IMG/VR virus record: IMGVR_UViG_3300043446_004613
Coordinates: 1 to 64,000 of that record
Strand: one strand, 5' to 3'
DNA: 64,000 nucleotides
Every line of letters starts with the position of its first letter. Within the stretch, counting starts at the first letter, position 1. The position numbers were made by a program, and so were the translations under genes. A model generated the notes under the pieces. The model was not told the origin of the DNA. It saw only the letters and a list, made by a program, of their open reading frames with translations, and did not search any database. Shown here one piece after another: positions 16,698 through 46,400 of this stretch.

Positions 16698-17114
16698 ATG
16701 AAAGGCGACACGATCAAATATAGCGAAGGCTACAAGTACCGCACGGAACAGACTTATACCGTCCAGACCGGGATTACCGGCTATTCGGTTTTTAATGCCT
16801 TTTACTCTCTTACCGCCAGCGGTCTGCTGACCATCGGCACCGGTTACGCATGGGACGGCCCAAGCGGCCCCTGCCCAGACTGGAAGTGTTTTCAGCGTTC
16901 GTCTCTGATCCATGATGTCCTGTATCAGATGATGCGCCGTGAACAGCTGCCGATCACCTGCTTTCACCCGGCAAATGTCGAATTCAAGGTCGCCAGTCTG
17001 GAAGACTGCAAGTTCTACGAGAAACCGGCGGTTTACATTGCATACGCGGCAGTCGAAAAATTCGGCATGCAGTTTGCCAAGGAACAGCCGGACATTATCC
17101 TGATTGCTCCGTAG
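16698..17114 (+). CDS. DUF1353-like protein
   Basis: GYAWDGPSGP...SLIHDVLYQ. Confidence 0.75.
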   Translation: MKGDTIKYSEGYKYRTEQTYTVQTGITGYSVFNAFYSLTASGLLTIGTGYAWDGPSGPCPDWKCFQRSSLIHDVLYQMMRREQLPITCFHPANVEFKVASLEDCKFYEKPAVYIAYAAVEKFGMQFAKEQPDIILIAP

Positions 17115-17151
17115 GCCAAGTAGTTAGAGCGCAGTAACACCGCAAAACGCT

Positions 17152-17610
17152 ATGATTTTTAACGACAATCCGATAACGACGTCCGTATTCAACGGCTATT
17201 GGATTACGACCGCCATCCTCGCTTTTCCAACTGGCACTAATAACAAAGGCTACATCCGCGCTGAATTCGCGCCGTACGATGGTACGCACGTACTTGCTTC
17301 AGGCGAGAAAGTGGAAAACATCTACCCGCTGACGGAAAAGATGACCGCCACGCCGTCACTGGCGGCAGCTGTCAATGCAGCCAAAGCGACCGCCACCCGT
17401 TTGTCCAAAAAGTCAGCTACCTGTACGCGCATCGGCGTAAGCGCTCCGGCTCCGGGTAAACAGGCGCGTGTTACGTTCATGTTTGATGACAAGAGCGTCT
17501 ATGCCGTACCGGATGCGTTCGACTTGATGACCAAGGACGCTGACTTTGCGTCAGTGTTCACGAACACAATGAACGAGATTGCCAAGCAGGCAGGTCTTCA
17601 GATTGGTTGA
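17152..17610 (+). CDS. Hypothetical protein, probably virion-associated
   Basis: TAGTTA at 17121-17126; located in the adhesin cluster. Confidence 0.6.
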   Translation: MIFNDNPITTSVFNGYWITTAILAFPTGTNNKGYIRAEFAPYDGTHVLASGEKVENIYPLTEKMTATPSLAAAVNAAKATATRLSKKSATCTRIGVSAPAPGKQARVTFMFDDKSVYAVPDAFDLMTKDADFASVFTNTMNEIAKQAGLQIG

Positions 17611-17690
17611 CTGCTGCTGACCTCAACAGCCCATGCTGACGGCGCACAGGTTGTTGGAACTAATAAACGGAAGCCGTAAAAAGATACGTT

Positions 17691-18014
17691 ATGAAACTGA
17701 CTTTAGACCACGTCAACGCGATTGAGACAGCAACCACAGCTTTCGGCGAAGCAGGCTTCAGCGCACTGCGCCGGGCAGTCGACCAGTACGACAAGATTTG
17801 CTGCGAGCAGTGCAAAGATAACTGGATGATCCGGCTGGCGAAGCTCAAACGCACCAACGAGGTGGCGTTTGCAAAAGTCTACGCCGTGCTGGAATCTGGA
17901 AAGCAACAGCAGCTGGACACGTTTATCGCCCAATACGCCGGAACAGACCTGCCGGAACCTGTCGAAGAGAAGAAGCTGAGCGAATTGATCGCTTCTGGCG
18001 CAGTAACCCTTTAA
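17691..18014 (+). CDS. Hypothetical protein
   Basis: ORF track. Confidence 0.55.
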   Translation: MKLTLDHVNAIETATTAFGEAGFSALRRAVDQYDKICCEQCKDNWMIRLAKLKRTNEVAFAKVYAVLESGKQQQLDTFIAQYAGTDLPEPVEEKKLSELIASGAVTL

Positions 18015-18028
18015 CAAAAAAAAAGATT

Positions 18029-18769
18029 GTGCAACGCTACGCATCAAACACATACCTACCCGGCTATCCCGGCGTGCGCATAATCCGTCGGCTCGACCCT
18101 CCGCCGCCGCAGGCTTCACCCTACATCCGGCCCAATGCCAGCATCTTCATGGCAGGTACTCCGCCGGAAGATTATATCTGGCAGAACAACACGCCGGACT
18201 TTTACGAGTACGTATCGCTGGATTTGTACACGTCGGGAATCGCAGAACCTTACAGCTTGGTGTGCTATGTTTCCGCGCTTCGGAGTAACTCCTACTTTTC
18301 AGACGCCGAACTGATAGCGCTGAGCTTTCCAAGTTTGACGTATATTGGTGATAACGTGTTCTTTGAAGGAAGTAACCTTGAGTCGCTTGATATGCCGAAT
18401 CTGGTTGCTTGCGGCGACATCACTTTTGATATTACCAGCACAAAACTTACCAGTGTGGTGCTGCCTTCGCTTGTTCAACCACCTACGATATTCGCTATCT
18501 CAAACAACTATAACGGACTGGAGACAATCAGTTTGCCGAGTTTGCAGGCTACCGACTACTGGTACCGAGCGCTGTTTACAGAGAATTCGCTTACGCAGGA
18601 GTGTGTTGATGCTTTGCTTGCCCAGTGGGTCAGCATCGGTCAAGACTTCGGCGAACTCTGGCTGTGCTACGGCAGCAACGCCGCACCTTCTGTCCAAGGA
18701 GAAATCGACGCCCAAACGTTGCGTGATCGTGGCATGCTTGTTTACACCAACCCTGATCACCTGCCATAA
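18029..18769 (+). CDS. LRR/receptor-L-like beta-solenoid protein
   Basis: Repeats L.SL..P.L; C-cap LTQECVDALLA...L.DRG..V.TN. Confidence 0.7.
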   Translation: MQRYASNTYLPGYPGVRIIRRLDPPPPQASPYIRPNASIFMAGTPPEDYIWQNNTPDFYEYVSLDLYTSGIAEPYSLVCYVSALRSNSYFSDAELIALSFPSLTYIGDNVFFEGSNLESLDMPNLVACGDITFDITSTKLTSVVLPSLVQPPTIFAISNNYNGLETISLPSLQATDYWYRALFTENSLTQECVDALLAQWVSIGQDFGELWLCYGSNAAPSVQGEIDAQTLRDRGMLVYTNPDHLP

Positions 18770-18770
18770 C

Positions 18771-19496
18771 ATGCAAAACTCACCCTACAGCTGGAGTCCA
18801 GAAACAATCGATTTTGCCGGTGCAGCCGGTTGGAATCTTGATACTGAGGGCAGTGGTATTGTAAACCTGCTTTATATTCCAACGACGCTTCGTTATCTGT
18901 ACTTCTATGGACAAAACAGTCTTGAGTCGTTTGAGGCACTTAACCTTGTACACGTAACGGATGGACTCTACATCTACTCAAATTCAGCGCTCACTACGAT
19001 TGCATTGCCCGAGCTTGTACTGGTAGAGGGTTATTTTGAACTTGATGCCTGTCCTTTGGTGACATCGCTAAGTTTGCCAAAGCTCGTAAGCGTCTACGAC
19101 TTCTACGTCTACGTCTCAAACGTGACAACGCTAAGTTTGCCAGAGCTTACTGAATCGCCGAACGAGTTTTCTGTCACCAGCTGTCCGAGTCTAACTTCGG
19201 TTGACTTACCGAAACTTACGACGTGCGACGCTTTTTACCTGAGCTATAATCCAGCACTGACCACGCTGAACGTTCCAGAGCTTGTTCCCAACAGCTGGTT
19301 CTATTTCTCAGCGTACGGCAGCGCTCTTTCTTCTGAATCCGTAAATGCCGTGCTGGCCCGCTGCGTAGCTTCGCTTGCTTGCGTTTCAGGTATTATGGAC
19401 TTCAGTGGCGGCACGAATCAGCTGCCGACAGGTCAAGGCTTGATCGACATGCAAACGCTTATCGATCGCGGTGTAGCAGTCAACATAAACACCTAG
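18771..19496 (+). CDS. LRR/receptor-L-like beta-solenoid protein (paralog)
   Basis: LTTL.LPEL repeats; same C-cap; start reassigned to MQNSPY. Confidence 0.7.
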   Translation: MQNSPYSWSPETIDFAGAAGWNLDTEGSGIVNLLYIPTTLRYLYFYGQNSLESFEALNLVHVTDGLYIYSNSALTTIALPELVLVEGYFELDACPLVTSLSLPKLVSVYDFYVYVSNVTTLSLPELTESPNEFSVTSCPSLTSVDLPKLTTCDAFYLSYNPALTTLNVPELVPNSWFYFSAYGSALSSESVNAVLARCVASLACVSGIMDFSGGTNQLPTGQGLIDMQTLIDRGVAVNINT

Positions 19497-19508
19497 GCGG
19501 ACTGTACC

Positions 19509-19946
19509 ATGACCGCGCCACAGCAGATTGTAGGACGGCTTCTTGAAGACGAAGTAAATCCGCAAGATTACATCGACGCACTGCCATTCAGTTTAGAAAT
19601 AAATCGTCTCGTCAAAGGGATCATGCGTGAAGCGCCGTACTGCATGGACGTGCCAGAAGAGAAGCAGAATTTTCTTAACTGGCTGGATAACAATTCGCAA
19701 TTATTACCGGACTTGGAGCGAGCCAAGGACATCATAACGGCGAATCAGTCGTGGTGCTTTGACAACGTCGAAGACGTAGCCCTGTTCATTTCGATGCTGA
19801 CCGGTAAAGTCCATACCGAAAATCCGTGCGAGCGCTGCGATGGTACCGGGGATGATCCAAATGATGTCGGCTACCTGTGCCCAGCGTGCTACGGGTGGGG
19901 CTACCAGCTTATCTCCGATCTCGGCTCCAAGGAACCTACACAATGA
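19509..19946 (+). CDS. LLE-tagged protein with DnaJ-type Zn finger
   Basis: IVGRLLE|DEVNPQDYID; CERCDGTG and CPACYGWG. Confidence 0.65.
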   Translation: MTAPQQIVGRLLEDEVNPQDYIDALPFSLEINRLVKGIMREAPYCMDVPEEKQNFLNWLDNNSQLLPDLERAKDIITANQSWCFDNVEDVALFISMLTGKVHTENPCERCDGTGDDPNDVGYLCPACYGWGYQLISDLGSKEPTQ

Positions 19947-20347
19947 AACCTAGATCAATCATATCCCGGATGCTTGAGGACGAAGAAGTCGATCGCTACG
20001 TCGACCAGTTGAAGTCCAGACCGAACATCAAGGATGTATTCGCAGCACTGGAAGCTGCGTTCGGTTTGGTAGACGGTTGGTGGCAGTACGTCAACGACCG
20101 CTGGCACGGCGGCCCGGTGCTAGTTGTGCTCGGAATCCCGACAACAAATACCGAAGACGTAAACGCTACGGCGATTGAGACACTGAGTCCGTTCGGTATT
20201 AAACCAGTAGACGTCTCGTATGACTTAGAGTTTGAGCAACTTTCCGTGTTTCTGCCGTTGGACAGTATCAACGCACCACCGCCAAAAACCAAAGAAGAGG
20301 CGGAAGAGGCTGACCTGTTCAGCGGTCGAGAGGAAGAAGGTAGTTAG
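19943..20347 (+). CDS. LLE-tagged protein
   Basis: MKPRSIISRMLE|DEEVDRYVD. Confidence 0.6.
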   Translation: MKPRSIISRMLEDEEVDRYVDQLKSRPNIKDVFAALEAAFGLVDGWWQYVNDRWHGGPVLVVLGIPTTNTEDVNATAIETLSPFGIKPVDVSYDLEFEQLSVFLPLDSINAPPPKTKEEAEEADLFSGREEEGS

Positions 20348-20355
20348 ACTGGAAC

Positions 20356-21003
20356 ATGAACATTCCGGTCACATACGTACCCGATCCACTCAAAGTGGAC
20401 GGCGGAGGAACGGTAGTGCCTCAAGCGCTGCCGAGCGCAGACATGCCTATCACCGTAATACCTGCGCCGGTCTTGCCTCCCGTGCCGCTTCCGCAGTTCT
20501 CGTGTACGTTGGTACCTGATCCGAACAAAGTCGATGGCGGTGGTATCGTCGAACCGCAGCCCGAACCTGTCTCCAACATTCCGGTGACCTATGTCCCTCC
20601 GCGTTCGACCACACTGCCGACAGTTTACTTCACAGCCGCGCCGACAAGCGGTGAAGCTCCGTTGAGTGTCGTGTTCACAAACGAAAGTACGCTAGGCGTC
20701 TATTTCACGTGGGATTTTGGTGATGGCACAACCAGTAACAGCGTATCGCCGACACACATCTATACCGGAACAGGTACGTACACGGTTGAATTAGCCGGTA
20801 TCGATGCAAGCGGTACGACGTACTACACCCGCGAGAACTACATCGCAGCAGTGAACAGCGCACCGCCAGCCCCGGTTGCTGACTTTACTGCTACGCCGTT
20901 AACCGGCGATGCTCCTTTGAGTGTTACGTTTACCAACCTGAGTACGAACGGAACGTACTTCACATGGGATTTCGGCGACGGCACCATCGTCAATAATCCT
21001 TGA
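20356..21003 (+). CDS. Pro-rich protein with 1.5 PKD domains
   Basis: PDP.KVDGGG twice; F.A.P..G.APL.V.FTN.S...WDFGDG twice; TAGTTA at 20341. Confidence 0.8.
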   Translation: MNIPVTYVPDPLKVDGGGTVVPQALPSADMPITVIPAPVLPPVPLPQFSCTLVPDPNKVDGGGIVEPQPEPVSNIPVTYVPPRSTTLPTVYFTAAPTSGEAPLSVVFTNESTLGVYFTWDFGDGTTSNSVSPTHIYTGTGTYTVELAGIDASGTTYYTRENYIAAVNSAPPAPVADFTATPLTGDAPLSVTFTNLSTNGTYFTWDFGDGTIVNNP

Positions 21004-21015
21004 CTACGCGCTACC

Positions 21016-22758
21016 ATGAATCCGACTCACCTCTATATCAGCGCTGGAACGTACACGGTCGTACTCACAGCTACCGGCCCTAGCGGAACCAGTACAAAAA
21101 CACGCACGAATTACGTTGTGGTCGCTGAACCGCCAGTGATCTACTGGAAAGGTATAAATTCGGACTGGAACGATCCGAATAACTGGTATCTAGATTCAGC
21201 TGGTACAGTTCCGTCGCCGTATGCCCCTTGGCTTGCTTCTGACGCTCACTATCTAGCTTCAGACTTGGCGCTGTGTGATTCAGCCATTGAAACGCCCGGA
21301 ATCACGAGCGTTTTAAGTGCTAATGTTACCGGTACGTGCAACCTGCACGTTGAGCTTAGTGGTGGTTCTGTATACAGCGGTAAATGGCAGAGCAACGATT
21401 TTTACGCTTACAGCGGATCAATTTACGGAGGTATGTACGAGTCGCTGTTGTTCGTCGATGGCGCTACGATTTATTCAGGTACGTTCAACTCGGAAGTTAA
21501 TTTAAGCAGCGGTGAAATATACGGCGGCACCTTCAACGGAATCGTATACACATCCGGTGAAATCTACGGTGGTACGTTTAACGATTACGTAGAAAACTCA
21601 AATAACATTTGGGGTGGAACATTCAACTCTGATTTCGTAAACGGCAGCGGCAGCTTCGTGTATGACGGCAATTTCAACGGTGCCGTCACCAATAACGCAG
21701 GTGCCGGATTCTACGGTGGATTTGTTACATCGTCCTCGTTTACAAACTACGGTACCGTATCTGGGCCTGATGTAGATTATCTGAGCATCACTGTAACAGC
21801 GTTGATGAACTATGGCTTCATTTGGGGAGGCTACTGGGCGATGACCAGTATATCGACGGAAAGCGGTGAAGTACATGGTGGCACTTTCTTGACGGCGGAT
21901 GCTAGTTTTACCGTATACAATACCGACTTCAGTTCGCAGGATTATCCGCTCGTATCAGACGGAGGTACTATCTACATCGATCTAGCAACATGCCTCAATG
22001 CCTACGATCCGACATTTCCGTTTAGCGGCATAAATGGAGGTCAAGTCGTATTAGTCGAACCGCCTAACGGGTTGCTCAATTCGCTGGAAGCTTACTGGAC
22101 ATTCAGCGCACCACCCGTAAACGGAGTCTATTATTACGATGTTACCGGTAACCACACGCTCGATGTAGCCGCTAATCAGCCATCAGATGCAACAGGTATT
22201 GTCGATACCGCGCTTGTTTTTGGACAAAACAGCCCTGATTACTTGGTCGGCGACGCTATCTTTGTCGGTATGGACTACGGGCACGACGCAGTGACAATCA
22301 ACTATTGGGCACAGTACCAGTCGACGATTATCGATAGCTCGTCGGCAGCTTATCAGCTATTAAACGTTGACCAGAACTCAGGTATTGCTACTTATCAAGC
22401 GTACTGCGACCCATCCGGTGATTTTGGATACTTCAAAAATGACGAAATCGGAACCGTTAACCTCAACGGCGATGTCTATGATCGCTGGATAATGTTTACA
22501 GCCGTTCGCTTATACATTGACAATAATGGCGGATACTGGCTGTTCTACGTTGATGGTGCTTTGGTGCTTGAAGGCTACGATAACGGCATATACAGTTACA
22601 CATCTACGCACTACTTAGGAAACGATTCATCTGAAGGTTATGGTTGGATTGGTTCTGTCTGCGGCTTAGGGATATGGTCAACAGCACTGAGCGTAACGCA
22701 GATAAATCAGCTGTACAACAACGGCAATGGTTTGTCGTACTCGCATTTTACTACTTGA
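21016..22758 (+). CDS. Virion adhesin/tail-fibre-like protein: half-PKD, beta-helix (IYGGTFN repeats) and LamG/ConA domain
   Basis: NPTHLY..AGTYTV.LT; GGTFN repeats; AYW.F...W.M.T.V...YVDG...IWS.ALS..QI.QLYNNGNG. Confidence 0.8.
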   Translation: MNPTHLYISAGTYTVVLTATGPSGTSTKTRTNYVVVAEPPVIYWKGINSDWNDPNNWYLDSAGTVPSPYAPWLASDAHYLASDLALCDSAIETPGITSVLSANVTGTCNLHVELSGGSVYSGKWQSNDFYAYSGSIYGGMYESLLFVDGATIYSGTFNSEVNLSSGEIYGGTFNGIVYTSGEIYGGTFNDYVENSNNIWGGTFNSDFVNGSGSFVYDGNFNGAVTNNAGAGFYGGFVTSSSFTNYGTVSGPDVDYLSITVTALMNYGFIWGGYWAMTSISTESGEVHGGTFLTADASFTVYNTDFSSQDYPLVSDGGTIYIDLATCLNAYDPTFPFSGINGGQVVLVEPPNGLLNSLEAYWTFSAPPVNGVYYYDVTGNHTLDVAANQPSDATGIVDTALVFGQNSPDYLVGDAIFVGMDYGHDAVTINYWAQYQSTIIDSSSAAYQLLNVDQNSGIATYQAYCDPSGDFGYFKNDEIGTVNLNGDVYDRWIMFTAVRLYIDNNGGYWLFYVDGALVLEGYDNGIYSYTSTHYLGNDSSEGYGWIGSVCGLGIWSTALSVTQINQLYNNGNGLSYSHFTT

Positions 22759-22759
22759 T

Positions 22760-23002
22760 ATGAACATGAACATTGTAAACGTAATCCCAAAAGCTGTGGA
22801 AATCGTTTCGGCACGTACTGAAACGTTCAGCACCATTAAATGGACGACGCTCGACGACGCTTTTAACTCCAAGCTGTTGATCATCGTCAACGGTCAAATC
22901 CGTATAACTGTTACGGGCCAAGACTACATCAGCCTCGGTGACTGGACAGATGCTACGATCAAGCAGCTGGTTTTAACGCGCTTGGGTCTTACGGAAGCGT
23001 AA
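22760..23002 (+). CDS. Small tail-fibre-associated protein
   Basis: GQDY..LGDWTD...LGL; follows the fibre-like gene. Confidence 0.55.
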   Translation: MNMNIVNVIPKAVEIVSARTETFSTIKWTTLDDAFNSKLLIIVNGQIRITVTGQDYISLGDWTDATIKQLVLTRLGLTEA

Positions 23003-24624: not shown

Positions 24625-27600
24625 TCACGGCTCAAAACGCATGGCGCTGAGCACTTCATCGTACCATTTGCTGTAATGGATACCGATCCGCTCGATCACT
24701 TTTGCCTCTTCTTCTGGCGGGACACTGCTGGCCGCACAGCGCTCAAGGGCTGAGTCGAGATCACGAAGCATGGCCGCCGCGCTGTTCGGTGTCTCACAGT
24801 TGACGTCCTGAGCCGCGTTGAGCCAAGTCTTGTCGCGATAGTTGTACACCCGCACAACAGCTTCTACAGTGTTTCCGCCAAACAGCCAGAGATGGATGGC
24901 GTGCTGATTTCCGTCCGGCGCTTTGATGCCTTTGATCCAGCTGCGCGTCATTGCCGACTCGGTGTTGTTGAAGATAAAAACTTCATGTTTTTCACCGTTC
25001 TTGGGTACGCTCCAACCAAGCCGCTGAAGCTCTGTCAGCAGCGGATTCGCATCCAAGTTGCCGATAATTCCTTCGGGATCGTCAGGATCAGAAGATTCAG
25101 CTACCGGCCCTTTGGCCAGCGCTTTAGCACGGGCTTCTAGTGCGTCAATGCCGTTGATTAAATCGTAAAATGACAGGCTGTGCTCGTGCTCCATATCGCG
25201 CCAAGCCATACCATCAGCCAGCCAGAACGTGACATCGTAGATCGTATTCGCGTCGTCTGTTGCTATGGAGCCGCGACGGCTGATACCGAGCATTACCTCG
25301 CGCTGACGTCCGCTGAGTTCATTTCGCGGCCCGCAGAATATCTTGTAGATGAGATCAGCTTCGCGGGTGTAGCCGCGCTGTTTTAGCATGTCGCGCAAGT
25401 TCAGTAGGTGCTCAGCCCCCTCAGCAGATGGTTCATCAAATGATTCTGCGTTCTCGACGATGCGCGGTTGCGTCCAACGCTTTATGCAGGCGTTCAATGT
25501 ATCCGCCAGTTGTGGCAGGTCGCAGGTAACTTCAAAATGTGTCGGCATGTACGCCGAGTCGAAGAAGTACGCTAAGTAGATGTGATAGGCGTACTCGCCA
25601 GCCGCTGGTTTTGTGCGGCGGTCACGATCCACGTAAATGTAGCGAGCCGGATCGTTCTTGCCACGGCCCTGATAAATCAGTTTTTTCCACTCAAGCGTAA
25701 AGCGATCATCATAGTAGCGCACCGGCTCGAACCCAAGCCGAGTAAGCAGCGCACTGGCTTCCTCTTCCTGCGAAAATTGCTCCTTGTAGCGTTCAAGGTC
25801 GCCAGTGTCATCGACGTCAGCAGCGCTCTCTTCGACGGCTTCTTCGTAATCTGCCGGGAATAGTTCAGCGGAGCGCTGGTACACGAGCGATCGGATGTGT
25901 TCAGCCTCCGGGCTTTCGTAGGAGATGTCGTTGTTGTCGATGTACTGGGAGGACACTTCAGATGCAAGTTCGTCCGCCCGGCGCGGCGTGAGATCACCGC
26001 GTTTGTTCGCCTGTCGGTCAAATTCAGCAACGGCCTGCTGGGCCAGCAGCTTGTACGCGTTAGCCACTTCGGCTGCGTAGGCATCAACACTGGCCTGTGC
26101 GTCTACATCCTCACTTTCCGTGACGCTCACCTCTGGAGGCACAGTGAAGTACAAACCGAAATCGCCATCGCTGAACGGAGCGTAAAACTCGAATTTACGT
26201 GCTTGAGGGCATGCAGAACGGATAGCCAGTACACCGTCTTTTTTGGCTTTATCCGCAATAGCGTCATACTCTTTGTCCGGCATATCATACGTAAGTTCAA
26301 GCGGACTGTTCCACTCCATAAGATATATCGTGCTGGGAGTCGGGTTGCTTTCACTGTTCGGCGGAAACGCCGCTCGGCAGTAAACATACTCGTAGCCTGC
26401 TTGTTTCAGGTTACCGGCAGCCTCTTTCAGCGAAAATGCAACGGGAAGTTTGTCGATGTAGCCAGCTACATCGTCATCAGGAAGCTCAAAGCTTTCACGA
26501 ACCGGCTTGCGCGGAAAACGGACAAGTTCGTCACGCATGCTCGTGTCCCAGCGGCGAATTTCTTCTTCAGGCTCGTCATGTAAAAAGGCTAGTGACTCGA
26601 TGTCCGTTTCCCACCCGGCATCACGCATTGTCTTGATCCACTTCTGGTGAAACTTAGACTTACTGCCTTCATCCGGTAACGCAGTACCGGTTAGCTTTGT
26701 GGAGGTCTGGTCGGCGAGTTCACCAAGCTTTGCCAGCCATTTCCGGGCTACACCGGCTTTGCGCATCGATTTTGGCACGTACAGGCGGTCTATGTGAAAC
26801 GAGTCTTTGTTCGGTGTACCGCTGATCTTAACCCCGTTAGGCAGCGTCCAGTGATAATCTATCTGCACGGTGCCAGCGTTGTCTATTTCCTCAGCGTCCG
26901 TGCGCGTGGCCATAGCGGACATGGCCTCAATAAAAGGACTCTGGTAAACACTCATCTGGCGCTGAATGAACGGCTCGGGATCATCTTCTGATTCTTTGAT
27001 GTGCGCAACCATGCCGGGATGTTCGTTGAATACATCGGCACGCTTAGACGCGACAGTTGTATTCTGACTGATGAGCCACTCTTTAGGCGGAGGCTCTGAT
27101 GGTTGGAACAGTCGCTCTACATCATCAACATCTGTCTGCGTGAAACGATAAACGCCGATACGTTGGTCAACCGCAAAACCCTTCAGATCAATCATCTCGA
27201 TATTGAAATTAGGATAACGGTCGATTCGATGGGTGATACGTGTCGGGTAATAGTAGCAAACACCTCTACGATCGAGCTTAGGTGCTACGTACCAGCGATT
27301 CAAAAACTTCTGCGCCCGCTTATATTCATCCTTGTTTACGACGTCAACTGGAACCTCTGTATCGACATATTCCTGCGCATTGACGTCATCTTCCTGCGAC
27401 TCGTAGGTATTCACGTAGTTCATCCGAGACTCAGGCGTCAGCTGTGCTTTTGAGATCAGAAGAGAAAAGCCGGTTCCGGTAACATGCTTCCACGGCTCCA
27501 TCTTAATTCTATACGATGTAAGCTTGTGATCGGTACAAAACTTTTCCAGCTGATTGCGGAAAAACTCAGTTTCAAGCGGCTTGCCGTTTTCATCTTCCGC

Positions 27601-41316: not shown

Positions 41317-42618
41317 CTATTGTTGATTAGACGGCACTTCGCAGCGGTGTGACCCGGTTTCTATGTCATCGTGTGAAATTAGCTTACCACAATTTTCGCA
41401 CGGATACGTAGGTGTTGAGTCGAGATGTCTGTACTCCAGCTTATGTCCGTTAGGGCACTCGTAGCAGTCGAGATCGTCAGGGTCACCGGCTTCAATACCG
41501 TCGAAACCTGCGCGTAGATAGCTGAAATCATTCAGCAAGCTACCTGTTTCGCCGCAAGCAGGGCAGCGAACAATAGGAAAACTGACACCACCGTCTACGT
41601 CTGGCTCAACAAATTCCAGTCTATGCGGAACTTCAAGCGTCCTTACGTCAATATTTTCAATATCACGCTCGCTAGGATCGTCAATATCTTCCAACAAGCC
41701 TGAACGGTAGACAGCTTCTTTCAATTTTGTATACGTCGCCGCATCAAAAGCGTCGCCAACATCAAGGGTAAGCGCTGCTACCGGCATTTTTGAGCGAAGA
41801 TGATCCAAAATATCCAGAGGGACGCCGCGCAATCGTAGAGCATCCCAGTCAATGTCTGCTCCGGCTTCGAGCACGTGTCGGTTTTCCTTCAGTGCCGGTA
41901 GAATAAGGCTTTCATAGCGCCACATTGCGTCTGAAACGCGCAAAAGGCACTCTAAAACCGGGGTAAGCTGCCGTCGATTGTGCGCTCTTTCCAGAGCCGA
42001 GCTAGTGCTCTCAAAAATTTTAGCCGTGATGCTTGCTGCTTTAGGTAGATTTTCGGCTAGGCGTTTGGCAAAGGCAGGTGCCGCAGCGCCGGTTAACCGG
42101 ATATGGTGACCGTAAACTGCATCTGGAGCTTGAAGAACGTTGCTTGTGGGGTAACCAAGTGCTTCGGCTTCCTCAATCAACTCTTCAACGATGCCGCCGA
42201 CGTCGTGTACACGGCTCGCTGCTGCCGCGATGGCGAGGCGGTCGGTACCGTTCAAGCTGCCCAGTGCGTTTACAGGCGTCCATTCGACCTTAGTGACGTC
42301 ACCACCACCCGGTTTGGCCTTGGTGTTAGGTTCAACGATGGCGTAGTAGAGCGTGACCGGCAGTTTCCGCGCCGCATGGCTGGCCAAAAAGAGCGGTTGA
42401 GGGTCGACATCCATGCCTGTCTCTTCTCTGACTTCACGCTTGCAGGATTCGACACCTGATTCGGCACCGTTGGCATGACCTCCCGGTATGCTCCAACGTC
42501 CGATTTCATCGGCAACCAGTGCAACTTCCAGTCTGTCGTTTGTTTTGCGCAGGACAACGCATAGGTACGATTGATCGTCCGTATCGGTCATCTTCTGGAT
42601 CAAAGCTTCTGCGCTCAT
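41317..42618 (-). CDS. Nudix hydrolase plus degenerate dTMP-kinase-like domain plus Zn-finger cassette
   Basis: GGH....ES....KREVREETG Nudix box; LL..SD.......ILPALK...VL; LLE|DIDDP; CPAC, CPNGH and CENC. Confidence 0.75.
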   Translation of the reverse strand: MSAEALIQKMTDTDDQSYLCVVLRKTNDRLEVALVADEIGRWSIPGGHANGAESGVESCKREVREETGMDVDPQPLFLASHAARKLPVTLYYAIVEPNTKAKPGGGDVTKVEWTPVNALGSLNGTDRLAIAAAASRVHDVGGIVEELIEEAEALGYPTSNVLQAPDAVYGHHIRLTGAAAPAFAKRLAENLPKAASITAKIFESTSSALERAHNRRQLTPVLECLLRVSDAMWRYESLILPALKENRHVLEAGADIDWDALRLRGVPLDILDHLRSKMPVAALTLDVGDAFDAATYTKLKEAVYRSGLLEDIDDPSERDIENIDVRTLEVPHRLEFVEPDVDGGVSFPIVRCPACGETGSLLNDFSYLRAGFDGIEAGDPDDLDCYECPNGHKLEYRHLDSTPTYPCENCGKLISHDDIETGSHRCEVPSNQQ

Positions 42619-43751
42619 ATCATGTAAAGGTCTATGGTGGTAGAACCGGTTACCGTGAATGTGTAAGGGTTCGAGGTGATCGTTACACCGTTGATGATCC
42701 AGTGATCAAACTGCCACGACAACGCCCCTACGATCTGTGCCGTCAATACCGCAGTAAATGCGTTTGAAAACGCTGTTGCATAGAGGCCGCCGTTTCGCAA
42801 AATCTCTAAATCCCACACACTACCGCCATGAGTATCGGTTAGATTGCAGTAGTCAGCTATTACGTTAGCGGTTTGGCTGTCCGTCGATGGGGTATAATGA
42901 TCAAATGTCCCTAGTGTATAGTATGGACTAGAAGCGCTGTACAGGTACAAGGCTGTTCCATATTTTCCGATTCCGTCTACGTTTGAAACGTTACGTATAC
43001 GAGCATTGATGCAGGAGGCAAGAATGACGTTATACGAACCCAGTTCAGCGAGCATCGAAGCGTAGGTCAGGCTGTGACCGGGAAGGGTATTAGGCCCTTG
43101 ACGGTCAGAATCAGTCACCAGTACGAACACGACGGCGGCTCCGACTCTGAACGTGTATGGGCCGTGCCCTGTAGCAGTATCACCTGCACCAGTCAGTGCA
43201 GCGTCCATCGCTTGGTAACCATCTTCAATGTTACCGAGAGTATTAAGGTTAAGCGCAGCTGCTTGTAGCTGAACAGCTGTTCCCCAATCACCGGTTCCAA
43301 CGACAAGTTTGTAGGCACGATCAGAATTAGTGGTGCTGGCATATCCCATGAGCGCGTACTTGTTTTGCGTTACTGTTCCAATTCCAGCCGCTAAAAGAGC
43401 AGCTTCCAGCTGACTCGGCATTGTTGTAAGCCAACTGTGCTCAGTTGACATAGAGCCAGACTCGTCGACTAGAAACACAATATCGACGTAATTGTCACCA
43501 GCCGGTTTTGGCTCACCGATAGCTGTCAGCGTGACGGATGTACCGGCAGGGTATTCACCCAACCCGGTTACGACCGCAGAATCTGTCGGATGAATTGTTG
43601 CGGTCAAAACGTACGTGGGATTGTACGCTGTGATGTAGTTCGTTTTAACAACCGTATCCGTGTTGTAGCGCCCAACGCCTGTTAGCGACACGGTGAATAT
43701 ACCAGCGGCGCTGTACGTGTGGATCGGATTTCTGTCGTGACTGGTTGACAT
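42615..43751 (-). CDS. Half-PKD plus vWA domain inserted in an InlB-B-repeat-like domain
   Basis: NPIHTYSAAG.FTVSL; DIVFLVDESGSM MIDAS; EDG; VLVTD. Confidence 0.8.
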   Translation of the reverse strand: MSTSHDRNPIHTYSAAGIFTVSLTGVGRYNTDTVVKTNYITAYNPTYVLTATIHPTDSAVVTGLGEYPAGTSVTLTAIGEPKPAGDNYVDIVFLVDESGSMSTEHSWLTTMPSQLEAALLAAGIGTVTQNKYALMGYASTTNSDRAYKLVVGTGDWGTAVQLQAAALNLNTLGNIEDGYQAMDAALTGAGDTATGHGPYTFRVGAAVVFVLVTDSDRQGPNTLPGHSLTYASMLAELGSYNVILASCINARIRNVSNVDGIGKYGTALYLYSASSPYYTLGTFDHYTPSTDSQTANVIADYCNLTDTHGGSVWDLEILRNGGLYATAFSNAFTAVLTAQIVGALSWQFDHWIINGVTITSNPYTFTVTGSTTIDLYMI

Positions 43752-43754
43752 AAG

Positions 43755-46400
43755 TTAATCGCCAAAGTCCCAAGTCCACGAAGCGCCGCCTCCGTTGGTT
43801 GAGAGGTTTGTGAAATTGACTACCAAAGGTAGTGTGCCTGCGGTCGGCGCGGCCACAAAATCAACGTCAAGGTACGGGATCGGCACTGCGTCAGACGGCA
43901 GCGTGAAACCCAAGCACTCAGGCATCCAGAACTCCGCCTGAGCAACGTAAAGTCCGTACTGAACCATCCAAGGCTGGCAGGTAACGACAATCGGTACGGA
44001 CTGGGCCGTATCGTACGCTGCCAGTACGGTGTCGGTGGCGTCATCGTAGTACAGTCCACGAGGCATCAGTACGGGTTTGCCGACATGGCCTGCTTGACTG
44101 AGCTTGAACGCTCCGACCTGCGCTACTGAACCGCCAGAGTAGTCTGTACCGGCAGACACGACGCCGTAGAACTTCTGTCCGTCAGTGTACGTCGTACCGT
44201 TGTACGTTACCGGCCCGACTGTCACTTCGTACTGATGTCCAGCGGTAATGCCGTCAGTAGGAATAGACGGCATTGAGCGTAAACGCGGATTGTAGATTTC
44301 GCAGAAGGCCATCCAGTTTTCGGTGCTCTCGTTTGACCAGACCGAACCGGTACCGCTAAATGTGGGTACGTCCGTACCGTAGGCTTTGACCGCCATCGTG
44401 TAGCCTTGCTGGATAGCCCGCTCAGCCCGATCAAGACATTCCTGACGCCAACCCTGAAAGCCTGCACTTAGCGGGGTAGTGTCGTACTCGTACATGCGCT
44501 GAACCTGAATCTGCTCGATGCGTACGGGCAAGGAAGGCTCATCGGTATAGTTCAGCACAAGGCTCTGTGCGCCGCTGCTCGAGGAAGCGACGGAGAACTG
44601 CCAACGGAATACGGAGGGCGTACGGTTTTCACCGAGAGCGTCCATCACGGCGTGGCTGCCTGCAAATGTACCGCTGATTGCGTAACGTCCGTACTGGGCC
44701 TTGCTCTCAAACACCAGCTTGCGGATATGCAACTGGCCTGTACCGCCTGTCCACTGGATAGGGTATTGGAACTGGCCGTTGTCGCGTACATCCATGACGG
44801 CAATCGGGCTGGTTACAACATCACCGTTCTGACCGCTAAAGGGAAGCGGCGCTACGTTCTGAACAACCGGTACAGCTTCAGAACCGGTTGCGATGTAATC
44901 CGCTTTGACGCGGAAGCCTGTTGTTTCGCCCGAGATATTGGTGTACTCCATCCACGTGTAGTACGGGCCTGCCGGAAGCGAAACGAGAAAGTTTATGGCA
45001 CTTTGGCGCACACTGCTATCCGTTGCACCGTACTGCGAGTACGTCGTGACAGCAGAAGTACCGGCAAACACCTCTCCGGGCAGATACAGTGATCCGCTGT
45101 AGTAAATGCCGTCACCGCCATCGACCATGTACAACTTGTCAGCAATACTGCCGCTTGGCACGTTGATCTCAAAGGTAGCGCCGCCGAGTGTACCGGTCGT
45201 ACTGGAGATGTTGGCGATACCTGCAAGCTCTACCCGGCCATTCGGCTGGGCGAGCACGCTCAACCGGTACGCGCCCGGCGTTACCGACCCGTCCAGCGTG
45301 ATGTCCATGACGGCTGGTACGGTGAAGCTGGCGCAGTCGTACTGCATCACTCCGCCGTAGACAGCGTCATTATTGGTGTAATTCAGGTACATCTCAGTGT
45401 CCTGCAAACCGACGCCCTTCGGCGCAAGCTGCCCAGCTTTGCCGCGCCAGTACTGCGCGTCTTTACGGTCAGGAATTTGCGTGAGAGTTTCAACGGTTTG
45501 ACCTACCTCGATACCCGGAATCGCTAGAGCATAGATTTGCGGAACATGTACTTCGTCCACACGTTCGCGCTGCCACTGGAGCGTCTTTTCGGCGATGTTG
45601 TAGATGATCTGATTTGCGCCGGGGAGCGCTGGTTCGGTCTGAAATACCCGGTGTGTACCGTCATCGTTGATGAGCGCGTAAATGTCCGGCTCACGCTGTA
45701 CCGTCCCGTACGATTCAATCTGGGTGTACAGACGGAGAGCGTGCTCAAATGGATTCTTCAGCACCTGACATAACTGGGCCACGTAACCGGCCAGCTGGTT
45801 ATCGCGGTCAGCGAGATTGCGGTCAGGTGTCTTGAAAAGATCGCGATTAAGAGGCAACGCCGGATTTATGTCGGCGCGGGCAGGCGTGCCTTCGCCCAAT
45901 GACCAGATGCTGGTGGATGGGATGATGGTGCCGGTTGCGTCTGAAAGCGGAATAGACGGATCGGCAAATGTAGCGTTGCAGGCCCGCGCCAGCACTTCGT
46001 ACACGATAGCGTCACGGCCATAAAGGTCAGCATCAGCGTAGCGGGCAGCGTCGTACGGGACGCTGACATTCGTGACGTGCCGCAGCTGAGTATTGAGTTG
46101 ACCAGCTTGATCCTCTGAAAAAGGCAGATTTGTTTCCGCCGGGCCTTGTAAAGTCGGCTTCAGTACGGAGTAGTTCCAAACGTCGCCTACTTGAACGGAT
46201 ACCTCAACGACAGCAGCGCCGACCATTAGGTCGCGGTAAGCCAGCTGACGGTCGCGCTGCTGGTACACCTTGGCGTCAAACGGCAGGTCAGGATTGACCG
46301 GCGCGAGGGTGCCGCTCAACGGTGCGACGTGCGTACCGGATTCCCATTTGATGGTGTTCCGTAACGCGAGTACTAAAGCGCTCTCTAGCTGATCAGACAT
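43755..46400 (-). CDS. Large virion structural protein ending in half-PKD
   Basis: 881 aa, beta-rich; C-terminal DF.AAPTAGTLPLVVNFTNLST...WTWDFGD*. Confidence 0.7.
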   Translation of the reverse strand: MSDQLESALVLALRNTIKWESGTHVAPLSGTLAPVNPDLPFDAKVYQQRDRQLAYRDLMVGAAVVEVSVQVGDVWNYSVLKPTLQGPAETNLPFSEDQAGQLNTQLRHVTNVSVPYDAARYADADLYGRDAIVYEVLARACNATFADPSIPLSDATGTIIPSTSIWSLGEGTPARADINPALPLNRDLFKTPDRNLADRDNQLAGYVAQLCQVLKNPFEHALRLYTQIESYGTVQREPDIYALINDDGTHRVFQTEPALPGANQIIYNIAEKTLQWQRERVDEVHVPQIYALAIPGIEVGQTVETLTQIPDRKDAQYWRGKAGQLAPKGVGLQDTEMYLNYTNNDAVYGGVMQYDCASFTVPAVMDITLDGSVTPGAYRLSVLAQPNGRVELAGIANISSTTGTLGGATFEINVPSGSIADKLYMVDGGDGIYYSGSLYLPGEVFAGTSAVTTYSQYGATDSSVRQSAINFLVSLPAGPYYTWMEYTNISGETTGFRVKADYIATGSEAVPVVQNVAPLPFSGQNGDVVTSPIAVMDVRDNGQFQYPIQWTGGTGQLHIRKLVFESKAQYGRYAISGTFAGSHAVMDALGENRTPSVFRWQFSVASSSSGAQSLVLNYTDEPSLPVRIEQIQVQRMYEYDTTPLSAGFQGWRQECLDRAERAIQQGYTMAVKAYGTDVPTFSGTGSVWSNESTENWMAFCEIYNPRLRSMPSIPTDGITAGHQYEVTVGPVTYNGTTYTDGQKFYGVVSAGTDYSGGSVAQVGAFKLSQAGHVGKPVLMPRGLYYDDATDTVLAAYDTAQSVPIVVTCQPWMVQYGLYVAQAEFWMPECLGFTLPSDAVPIPYLDVDFVAAPTAGTLPLVVNFTNLSTNGGGASWTWDFGD

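What the first reader, a model, noticed from the sequence alone, without database searches (positions are those of the whole stretch)
20870..21130. PKD domain split across two adjacent genes (site 1)
Seen: ORF 20356-21003 ends with the first half of a PKD (PVADFTATPLTGDAPLSVTFTNLST..WDFGDGTIVNNP*). ORF 21016 begins with the second half (MNPTHLYISAGTYTVVLTATGPSG..TRTNYV). The junction CCT TGA CTA CGC GCT ACC ATG is in frame. Inference: either readthrough of a leaky UGA-C stop to give a longer fibre, or two chains that dock by reconstituting one Ig-like fold.
Basis: partly seen in the sequence, partly recalled or inferred. Interest (0 to 1): 0.6.

Follow-up and report, generated by a model that had tools for sequence, protein, structure and literature searches.

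The report
PKD domain split between phage genes
In this freshwater jumbo phage, one small Ig-like (PKD) domain is encoded half at the end of one gene and half at the start of the next, at two separate places, and comparison with relatives suggests the halves are made as separate proteins that snap together to hang an adhesin module on an anchor protein.

Summary
ORF 20356-21003 ends with the first half of a PKD domain, then TGA and 12 in-frame bases. ORF 21016-22758 opens with the second half. The genome, a 211-kb IMG/VR phage, uses all three stops normally, so there is no recoding.

A second split lies in the same PKD loop at 43751/43755 on the minus strand. There an 881-aa protein ends WDFGD-TAA, followed by CTT and the ATG of a 378-aa vWA protein.

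Site 2 has many relatives:
- Fifteen orthologues at 50-66% identity end exactly at W[DN]FGD.
- In 12 junctions the next gene starts 2-5 nt later. Six are in frame and six are out of frame, after TAA or TGA.
- Both halves show dN/dS of 0.07-0.39.
- The halves are present together or absent together.
- Other relatives fuse the same two parts covalently with no PKD.

This rules out readthrough as the conserved mechanism at site 2. It supports two polypeptides joined by fold complementation.

Site 1 has no relatives, so its support is indirect:
- The anatomy matches site 2.
- The loop is lengthened by about 6 residues.
- The complex prediction gave weak support (ipSAE 0.52, best control 0.01).
- No RNA structure follows the stop.

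A minor readthrough product at site 1 cannot be excluded. I found no description of this arrangement in the literature searched.

The parts
20356..21003 (+). Site 1 upstream gene (215 aa). It has an N-terminal part with two copies of an NIPVTYVP...KVDGGG motif, one whole PKD, and the N-terminal half of a second PKD.
   Evidence: ORF list and Pfam. The direct repeat is at 20359/20575. No relatives of residues 1-95 were found.
20650..20844 (+). Intact PKD domain no. 1 of the upstream gene.
   Evidence: PF18911, 49.3 bits, no stop inside. It is 53% identical to the split PKD.
20869..21000 (+). N-terminal half of split PKD no. 2 (strands A to C), ending WDFGDGTIVNNP.
21001..21003 (+). TGA stop of the upstream gene, followed by C.
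   Evidence: It is the same in a second contig and in Logan contigs.
21004..21015 (+). 12-nt in-frame spacer (CTA CGC GCT ACC) with no Shine-Dalgarno motif.
   Evidence: Only 25 of 264 ORF starts in the genome have an SD-like motif.
21016..21123 (+). C-terminal half of split PKD no. 2 (strands C' to G), at the very start of the downstream gene (M-NPTHLY...).
   Evidence: Pfam profile positions 51-85 of 85. HMMER hits to thousands of PKD proteins all start at query residue 2. AF2 model.
21016..22758 (+). Site 1 downstream gene (580 aa): half PKD, a GGTF-type repeat region (about residues 100-330), and a LamG/ConA-like lectin jelly roll (330-580).
22003..22755 (+). LamG-like lectin domain of the downstream gene. 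It carries four clustered non-synonymous strain differences (A432G, T437M, V451F, S455L).
   Evidence: ESM Atlas features 0.96 and TM 0.71-0.77 to Laminin_G_3 clusters. SNPs.
43755..46400 (-). Site 2 upstream gene (881 aa). It is a conserved jumbo-phage protein with a CBM6/35-like jelly roll, and it ends with the N-terminal half of a PKD (...WTWDFGD-TAA).
   Evidence: AF2 pLDDT is 87.9 overall but 34-47 for residues 836-881. CBM-like domain Z 12.6.
43758..43880 (-). N-terminal half of the site 2 PKD.
43752..43757 (-). TAA stop plus the 3-nt spacer CTT before the next ATG.
42615..43751 (-). Site 2 downstream gene (378 aa): C-terminal half PKD (MSTSHDRNPIHTY...), an InlB-B-repeat-like Ig domain, and a vWA domain (DESGSMS).

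Best explanation
Both sites are naturally split PKD domains that act as a plug and socket between two separately made proteins.

The upstream gene ends with strands A to C of the beta-sandwich. The downstream gene begins with strands C' to G. The cut falls in the surface loop between the WDFGDG motif and the NPxHxY motif, and that loop is lengthened to hold the new termini.

The two genes sit 3-12 nt apart in one operon. The downstream ATG is therefore probably used by ribosomes that have just terminated, which would give roughly equal amounts of both chains (inferred). Neither half can fold alone (predicted). Each strand of one half pairs with strands of the other in both sheets, so folding and binding would be one event that gives a tight non-covalent joint (inferred).

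The joint would hang a distal adhesin-type module on a proximal anchor protein. At site 1 the module is a repeat region plus a LamG-like lectin. At site 2 it is an Ig-like domain plus a vWA domain.

Shown by comparison for site 2: the split state is conserved, it is independent of reading frame, both halves are under purifying selection, and the halves are gained or lost together. Inferred for site 1 from identical anatomy and from structure prediction only. Physical binding has not been shown for either site.
For: 1. The same loop is cut at two unlinked places in one genome.
2. Fifteen orthologues of the site 2 protein, at 50-66% identity, end exactly at W[DN]FGD.
3. In 12 junctions the next gene starts with ATG 2-5 nt after the stop. 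Gap 3 occurs six times (in frame). Gaps 2, 2, 2, 4, 5 and 5 occur once each as listed (out of frame). The stop is TAA eight times and TGA three times. The product always begins M-[SGA]-T-S...[ND]P-x-[HY]-x-Y.
4. dN/dS of both halves is 0.07-0.39 with synonymous sites near saturation.
5. A half-PKD start lies downstream in 9 of 9 further split loci and in 0 of 16 loci whose base protein lacks the half PKD.
6. Fifteen relatives carry the same base protein fused covalently to the homologous Ig-vWA part with no PKD at all. The split PKD therefore sits exactly where a peptide bond links the two parts elsewhere.
7. In the AF2 model of the 881-aa protein, the body has pLDDT near 90 but the terminal half PKD has 34-47.
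8. The site 1 junction read with X at the stop folds as one PKD (pLDDT 93), with the break in a loop.
9. Complex test of the site 1 halves gave ipSAE 0.52 (runs 0.51-0.53) against a best control of 0.01. The tool's verdict was weak support. The runs agree in at least 99% of contacts. The partner's pLDDT is 78-79, and the same chains score 38-39 with a wrong partner. On the tool's calibration the mark was reached by 51 of 78 solved complexes and 2 of 108 mismatched pairs. At 0.60 or under it was reached by only 5 of those solved complexes, and by all 4 mismatches that passed.
10. The site 1 loop is about 6 residues longer than in 60 ordinary PKDs and contains the ATG. A lone nonsense mutation in a bacterial PKD (L155) shows neither feature.
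11. The four strain differences in ORF2 are all non-synonymous and cluster in the lectin tip, as expected of an expressed binding protein.
Against: There is no protein-level or expression data: no RNA run holds the locus. Site 1 has no relatives, so its split cannot be shown to be conserved. Its junction is in frame with a TGA-C stop, so some fused product is possible. The complex score is in the range the tool itself calls weak, and a model may simply recognise a PKD from memory. What the anchor proteins attach to is unknown. The site 2 protein gives only weak structural hits to tail and baseplate proteins, and the Baseplate_J gene lies about 35 kb away. No intact-PKD intermediate was seen among the 120 listed relatives, so the origin of the split is unexplained.
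Confidence: 0.7

Rival explanations
1. Stop-codon readthrough at site 1. A share of ribosomes reads TGA-C as a sense codon and makes one 800-residue fibre with an intact PKD, and this fused chain is the functional form, with or without the separate chains.
For: The junction is in frame. UGA followed by C is the weakest termination signal reported for E. coli (my own knowledge: Poole, Brown and Tate 1995). The read-through sequence folds as a normal PKD. Phages are known to add Ig-like domains by recoding (PMC5009743).
Against: At the sister site, half of the 12 junctions are out of frame and most stops are TAA. ORF2 has its own ATG four codons after the stop. No RNA structure follows the stop (z +1.03). 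TGA-C is an ordinary stop in this genome, ending 27 of 114 TGA ORFs. Being in frame has a one-in-three chance, and stop-NNN-ATG is a routine junction here, seen in 13 gene pairs.
Confidence: 0.12
2. The two halves do not pair with each other. Each is a leftover or has its own role, for example a flexible tail on the upstream protein and an N-terminal arm on the downstream protein that binds something else, or strand exchange among copies of the same chain.
For: No binding data exist. The complex prediction is only weak support.
Against: The halves are always present or absent together. Both keep the PKD core residues under purifying selection. Together they make a full-length Pfam match. Fused relatives show that the two proteins belong together.
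Confidence: 0.1
3. Artefact or recent decay: a sequencing or assembly error, or a fresh nonsense mutation that broke one long gene, with the downstream part no longer made.
For: Site 1 is known from one phage population only. The second contig and the Logan contigs may come from the same sample.
Against: The contigs are covered at word depth 18-26 with no variant at the junction, while a co-occurring strain differs elsewhere. The loop carries a 6-residue insertion with an ATG. The 580-aa ORF is intact. The same design at site 2 is conserved across phages at about 65% identity.
Confidence: 0.04
4. Recoding in every lineage: readthrough where the junction is in frame, and +1 or +2 frameshifting where it is not, as with the Ig-like extensions of other phage structural proteins.
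For: Phage Ig-like extensions are reached by +1, -1 or in-frame decoding, apparently without preference (PMC5009743).
Against: There is no slippery run at ...TTT GGN GAY TAA.... The ATG is conserved right after the stop in all 11 sequenced junctions, which recoding does not need. In the known cases a whole domain follows the shift site, not half of one.
Confidence: 0.04

Closest known systems
Single-chain orthologues of the site 2 pair (for example P0083-P0092, P0097 and P0102; 1166-1427 aa)
   Same: They have the same base protein and a homologous InlB-B-repeat-like plus vWA module in the same order, in related jumbo-phage contigs.
   Different: The two parts are joined by a peptide bond with no PKD between them. 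Here they are two genes, with half a PKD on each side of the boundary.
Donor-strand complementation of chaperone-usher pilins (my own knowledge)
   Same: An incomplete Ig-like sandwich in one subunit is completed by a segment of the next subunit, which gives a very stable non-covalent joint.
   Different: Pilins lack only the last strand, and a chaperone first fills the groove. Here the domain is cut in the middle, about 3-4 strands per chain. No chaperone or usher is evident, and the partners are two different proteins rather than a polymer.
Ig-like domains added to phage structural proteins by programmed frameshifting (Fraser et al. 2006, as reviewed in PMC5009743)
   Same: An Ig-like domain lies at a gene end in a phage protein that looks structural or adhesive, and there is an unusual decoding signal at the boundary.
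   Different: In those cases a whole domain lies after the shift site and has no start codon of its own. Here the boundary runs through the domain, the downstream part has a conserved ATG, and its frame varies among relatives.
Leaky UGA readthrough in phage Q-beta, which makes the A1 protein (my own knowledge)
   Same: An in-frame extension follows a UGA in a phage structural gene.
   Different: The Q-beta extension has no independent start. At the sister site here the frame is not conserved and TAA is the usual stop.
Naturally split inteins and engineered split folds such as SpyTag/SpyCatcher and split GFP (my own knowledge)
   Same: One fold is encoded in two pieces that find each other and fold together.
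   Different: There are no splicing or isopeptide chemistry motifs. The pieces are encoded by adjacent, probably translationally coupled genes. The presumed role is structural attachment.

Membership tests
PKD domain (Pfam PF18911 / PF00801) | A full-length match to the profile above the gathering score | tested here: met
   This holds only when the two genes are read together. Site 1 gives 54.7 bits over profile positions 3-85 of 85, and residues 172-256 of the X-read product match. Site 2 gives 40 bits. The downstream half alone scores 23.2 bits, below the 27-bit cut-off.
PKD domain (Pfam PF18911 / PF00801) | A beta-sandwich fold with the WDFGDG and NPxHxY motifs | tested here: met
   The AF2 model of the junction read with X at the stop has pLDDT 93 and strands in the expected order. 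The motifs are seen in the alignment.
Programmed stop-codon readthrough | The downstream frame is conserved in phase with the stop among relatives | tested here: not met
   At site 2, six of 12 junctions are out of frame. Site 1 has no relatives to test.
Programmed stop-codon readthrough | The extension lacks its own start codon | tested here: not met
   An ATG lies 12 nt after the stop at site 1, and 2-5 nt after it in all 11 sequenced site 2 junctions.
Programmed stop-codon readthrough | A stimulatory downstream RNA structure or a special stop context | tested here: not met
   The fold of 20995-21100 has z +1.03 against shuffles. TGA-C is a common ordinary stop in this genome.
Alternative genetic code (TGA or TAA as sense) | In-frame stops of one kind throughout long genes, and poor coding density under code 11 | tested here: not met
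   Of 265 ORFs covering 94% of the genome, 114 end in TGA, 88 in TAA and 63 in TAG. The 881-aa and 1370-aa ORFs are open under code 11.
Chaperone-usher type donor-strand complementation | Only the C-terminal strand is missing, and it is supplied by an N-terminal extension of the next subunit | tested here: not met
   The cut is mid-domain. About 40 residues (strands A to C) are on one chain and about 40 (strands C' to G) on the other.
Chaperone-usher type donor-strand complementation | A dedicated periplasmic chaperone and an usher | not tested
   No such genes were noticed near either site, but they were not searched for specifically.
Split-fold complementation (functional class, not a sequence family) | The two fragments bind and fold together | tested here: inconclusive
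   The prediction gives ipSAE 0.52 against a best control of 0.01, which the tool rates as weak support. The half PKD is unfolded in the AF2 model of the lone protein. There has been no experiment.

The most novel reading that the evidence does not exclude
Split PKD halves are a portable, genetically encoded plug-and-socket system. Jumbo phages would use it to attach and exchange adhesin modules on virion proteins without covalent fusion. The two pairs in this genome arose separately, since the cut points differ and site 1's split PKD is closest to its own intact neighbour. They may be mutually orthogonal, which would make them natural prototypes for small self-assembling protein tags.
Probability: 0.4. 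Interest if true: 0.8.

Novelty: new variant of a known kind. Interest (0 to 1): 0.68.

Why it matters
If the halves really fold on each other, this is a natural case of a small Ig-like domain used as a two-piece connector between different proteins. The comparative record is unusually clear. The same two protein parts occur unlinked, covalently fused, or joined by the split domain in related phages.

This bears on three things:
- How phages build and swap receptor-binding modules.
- How gene callers and domain annotators treat half domains at gene ends, since each half scores below the Pfam threshold.
- Protein engineering, because a 40+40-residue self-assembling beta-sandwich would be a compact non-covalent tag pair.

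It also warns against reading every in-frame stop inside a domain as readthrough, recoding or a pseudogene.

Tried and rejected
**Searches that found no relatives or matches**
- Near-identity search of 19500-23000 in GenBank phages found nothing.
- The word search and the full HMMER search with the 580-aa protein gave only PKD-half and repeat matches and no full-length relative. A few hits with a PKD half near their N-terminus look like truncated gene calls in PKD arrays.
- Residues 1-95 of the upstream protein have no relatives.
- PHROGs found nothing for any of the four proteins or for most neighbours.
- An IMG/VR scan with the site 2 protein or its alignment gave only one fused relative.
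- The profile of the 881-aa family against PDB sequences gave nothing. Its ESM Atlas entry is a poor model. Foldseek against PDB gave only low TM scores.
- Seven literature searches found no description of a split PKD or split Ig-like domain across adjacent phage genes.

**Pattern scans for other split PKDs**
- An IMG/VR scan for WDFGD-stop-N0-12-ATG gave 9 chance hits and no other split PKD.
It returned only lineages that read TGA as Gly at the canonical WDFGDG position, plus one lone nonsense mutation.

**Ideas rejected**
- Stop recoding.
- A diversity-generating retroelement behind the clustered SNPs: there is no reverse transcriptase and no template repeat.
- A Shine-Dalgarno argument: the genome hardly uses SD motifs.

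**Limits**
- The complex-prediction result is reported with its controls under the best explanation. It is weak support, not proof.
Full report
**1. The observation**

The window is the first 64 kb of a 211,113-bp IMG/VR virus record that CheckV rates 93% complete. ORF 20356-21003 (215 aa) ends ...FTWDFGDGTIVNNP, followed by TGA. Twelve in-frame bases follow (CTA CGC GCT ACC). Then ATG 21016 opens a 580-aa ORF that begins MNPTHLYISAGTYTV.

Pfam places ORF2 residues 2-36 on positions 51-85 of the 85-position PKD_4 profile, at 23.2 bits, which is below the cut-off. Read across the stop with X, residues 172-256 cover positions 3-85. The six-frame search scores 20869-21123 at 54.7 bits with one TGA inside.

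In an alignment with 60 ordinary PKD domains, the break lies in the loop between WDFGDG and NPxHxY. That loop is about six residues longer here.

The stop is present in a second IMG/VR contig, which is identical over 10 kb and so is weak as independent support. It is also present in Logan contigs of two runs of one freshwater metagenome sample, at word depth 26 and 18. That sample may be the source of the window. One of those contigs differs from the window at four other places but not at the junction.

**2. No recoding**

A simple greedy ORF set covers 94% of the genome under code 11. It uses TGA 114 times, TAA 88 times and TAG 63 times as stops. TGA-C ends 27 of the 114 TGA ORFs. Gene junctions of the forms ATGA (43 pairs) and stop-NNN-ATG (13 pairs) are routine. 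Only 25 of 264 starts have a Shine-Dalgarno-like motif. The junction therefore looks like an ordinary, tightly coupled gene boundary in this phage.

**3. A second site**

The genome has three PKD matches. One is intact, at 20650-20844. The third, at 43629-43832 on the minus strand, contains a TAA.

At that site an 881-aa ORF (43755-46400) ends ...WTWDFGD-TAA. CTT follows, and then ATG 43751 opens a 378-aa ORF that begins MSTSHDRNPIHTY. This protein continues with an InlB-B-repeat-like domain and a vWA domain (DESGSMS).

The cut is in the same loop as at site 1 but at a different residue, and the loop is 2-3 residues longer than usual. The split PKD of site 1 is 53% identical to its intact neighbour and 46% identical to the site 2 PKD. 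This hints at separate origins, although the difference is small.

**4. Relatives of site 2**

The 881-aa protein belongs to a large family found on contigs of up to about 260 kb. Among the 120 listed members:
- 15 end exactly at W[DN]FGD, at 50-66% identity to the window's protein.
- 72 end about 50 residues earlier, with no PKD.
- 15 continue as one chain into a part homologous to the 378-aa protein, with no PKD between.
- 15 carry other extensions, and the remaining 3 lack the motif used to sort them.

I obtained DNA or gene coordinates for 12 split junctions. The next gene always starts with ATG 2-5 nt after the stop.

| Gap after stop | Frame | Loci |
|---|---|---|
| 3 nt | in frame | window, L005, L008, L010, L185, L186 |
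| 2 nt | out of frame | L006, L184, and the contig of P0109 |
| 4 nt | out of frame | L183 |
| 5 nt | out of frame | L009, L012 |

The stop is TAA in eight junctions and TGA in three. The downstream product always begins M-[SGA]-T-S...[ND]P-x-[HY]-x-Y and is 343-384 aa long.

Three further results bear on the split:
- Both halves keep the PKD core residues. Pairwise dN/dS is 0.07-0.39, with synonymous differences of 0.5-0.7 per site.
- A half-PKD start lies downstream in 9 of 9 further split loci and in none of 16 short-form loci, where a NUDIX gene usually follows directly.
- On a tree of the base part, split, short and fused forms are interleaved, and one split form (P0109) sits in a separate subclade.

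So the accessory module is often lost or exchanged, but the two halves travel together.

**5. What this excludes**

A reading frame that varies among relatives, TAA as the usual stop, and a conserved ATG rule out stop-codon readthrough as the conserved way of making the site 2 joint. There is no slippery sequence for frameshifting either. Phages do add whole Ig-like domains by +1, -1 or in-frame decoding (PMC5009743). In those cases the domain follows the recoding site and has no start codon of its own.

Purifying selection on both halves, and their joint presence or absence, rule out a decaying gene.

The fused relatives show that the two proteins belong together physically. The split PKD sits exactly where a peptide bond links them in other phages.

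**6. Structure predictions**

With a 90-sequence alignment, AF2 models the 881-aa protein well (mean pLDDT 87.9, pTM 0.77). The exception is residues 836-881, the half PKD, at pLDDT 34-47. This is what an incomplete fold should look like.

The site 1 junction read with X at the stop folds as one PKD (pLDDT 93, pTM 0.81). The stop, spacer and Met lie in a loop whose ten-residue block averages 78. The upstream chain supplies strands A to C, and the downstream chain supplies C' to G.

The complex test on site 1 used residues 160-215 of ORF1 and 1-45 of ORF2:
- ipSAE was 0.52 (runs 0.51-0.53), and the best of three controls was 0.01.
- The runs agree in at least 99% of contacts.
- The partner's pLDDT was 78-79, and the other chain's was 75.
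- With a wrong partner the same chains scored 38-39.

The tool calls this weak support. Overall the mark was reached by 51 of 78 solved complexes and 2 of 108 mismatched pairs. At 0.60 or under it was reached by only 5 of those solved complexes, and by all 4 mismatches that passed. A known fold may also score from memory.

**7. What the proteins are**

ORF2 of site 1 has a GGTF-type repeat region with many partial matches. It also has a LamG/ConA-like jelly roll at residues 330-580 (Atlas features 0.96; TM 0.71-0.77). Four strain differences, all non-synonymous, cluster at residues 432-455 of that domain. There is no reverse transcriptase or template repeat that would point to a diversity-generating retroelement.

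Upstream neighbours include a tail-assembly-chaperone-like gene at 16698-17114 and a BspA-type LRR protein.

The site 2 base protein has a CBM6/35-like jelly roll (Z 12.6, rmsd 2.8, 121 residues aligned). It gives only weak matches to tail and baseplate proteins. A Baseplate_J gene lies at 79.5-81.9 kb.

Both downstream proteins thus look like adhesins. Where the anchors sit on the virion is not known.

**8. Mechanism proposed**

- Step 1, shown: the two genes are adjacent, on the same strand, 3-12 nt apart.
- Step 2, inferred: terminating ribosomes restart at the nearby ATG, which gives matched amounts of both chains.
- Step 3, predicted: neither half folds alone.
- Step 4, inferred from the PKD topology and the predictions: the halves interdigitate in both sheets, so binding and folding are a single event and give a stable non-covalent joint.
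- Step 5, inferred from the fused and short relatives: the joint hangs an optional adhesin module on a conserved anchor.

For site 2 I put this at about 0.85. For site 1 I put it at about 0.6, because that site has no relatives and is in frame. Overall I put it at 0.7. A small amount of read-through fusion at site 1 would not contradict it.

**9. Comparison with known systems**

The arrangement works like donor-strand complementation of pilins and like split inteins or engineered split tags. It is not a member of any of these. The cut is mid-domain, no chaperone or splicing motifs are evident, and the partners are two different proteins. It is not Q-beta-type readthrough.

That pattern would miss variants such as site 1 itself. 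Seven literature searches found no description.

I rate it a new variant of a known kind, with interest 0.68.

**10. Caveats**

All evidence is computational. The read support may come from the sample of origin. The census for other split PKDs was narrow.

Noticed in passing
window 22310-22379 (ORF2 residues 432-455): A co-occurring strain (run X2) differs at four places within 70 bp and nowhere else in 3.2 kb. All four changes are non-synonymous (A432G, T437M, V451F, S455L) and lie in the LamG-like domain. The genome has no reverse transcriptase and no template repeat, so this is not a DGR; it may reflect selection on a binding surface.
   Followed up: partly
window 938, 19509, about 19940, 23626(-), 42618(-); genome 75515(-), 87552(-), 126396, 132497; NUDIX genes of loci L007, L013, L014, L019: Many unrelated proteins of this phage and its relatives begin with a shared peptide, roughly M-x(3-5)-[IV][IV]-x-[RKS]-[LM]-[LT]-E-[DAS]-[DE]. 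It could be a targeting or packaging signal.
   Followed up: partly
window 24625-28737 (-): A 1370-aa ORF with no family match carries several copies of an acidic motif, ESEDDVDAQ[DE]YVD. The motif resembles the tail of the shared N-terminal peptide noted above.
   Followed up: no
whole genome (G000): Only 25 of 264 ORF starts have a Shine-Dalgarno-like motif, and positions -10 to -5 are A/T-rich. ATGA overlaps (43 pairs) and stop-NNN-ATG junctions (13 pairs) dominate, which suggests a host with weak SD use and widespread translational coupling.
   Followed up: partly
window 16698-19496: Just upstream of site 1 lie a tail-assembly-chaperone-like gene (phrog_1158, E 1e-12) and a BspA-type leucine-rich-repeat protein (18029-18769). 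A second ORF with a similar repeat pattern seems to follow up to 19496.
   Followed up: no
window 20359-20381 and 20575-20597: The upstream protein of site 1 has an internal duplication: NIPVTYVP...KVDGGG, spaced 216 nt apart. No relatives were found in the databases, and its binding partner is unknown.
   Followed up: partly
L093, L150, L158, L160 (GTDB MAGs); L155: WDFGD-TGA occurs in several MAG contigs at the canonical Gly of WDFGDG. L160 has 106 in-frame TGAs in 1360 codons, and L093 is titled Candidatus Gracilibacteria, so these fit a lineage that reads TGA as a sense codon. L155 is a multi-PKD protein with a T9SS-type tail and a single TGA at the same spot, with no ATG after it. That is what a plain nonsense mutation or sequencing error looks like.
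   Followed up: partly
L005:1-614 and L184:604-1086: Relatives carry mobile-element-like genes near the site 2 module: an intein-type (Hom_end_hint/LAGLIDADG) 998-aa gene in L005, and an HNH/AP2 gene inserted between the two small conserved upstream genes in L184.
   Followed up: no
window 41317-42618 (-): A 433-aa NUDIX-domain protein follows the site 2 pair. In relatives without the vWA module it directly follows the base protein, so it is a conserved neighbour of unknown role.
   Followed up: no
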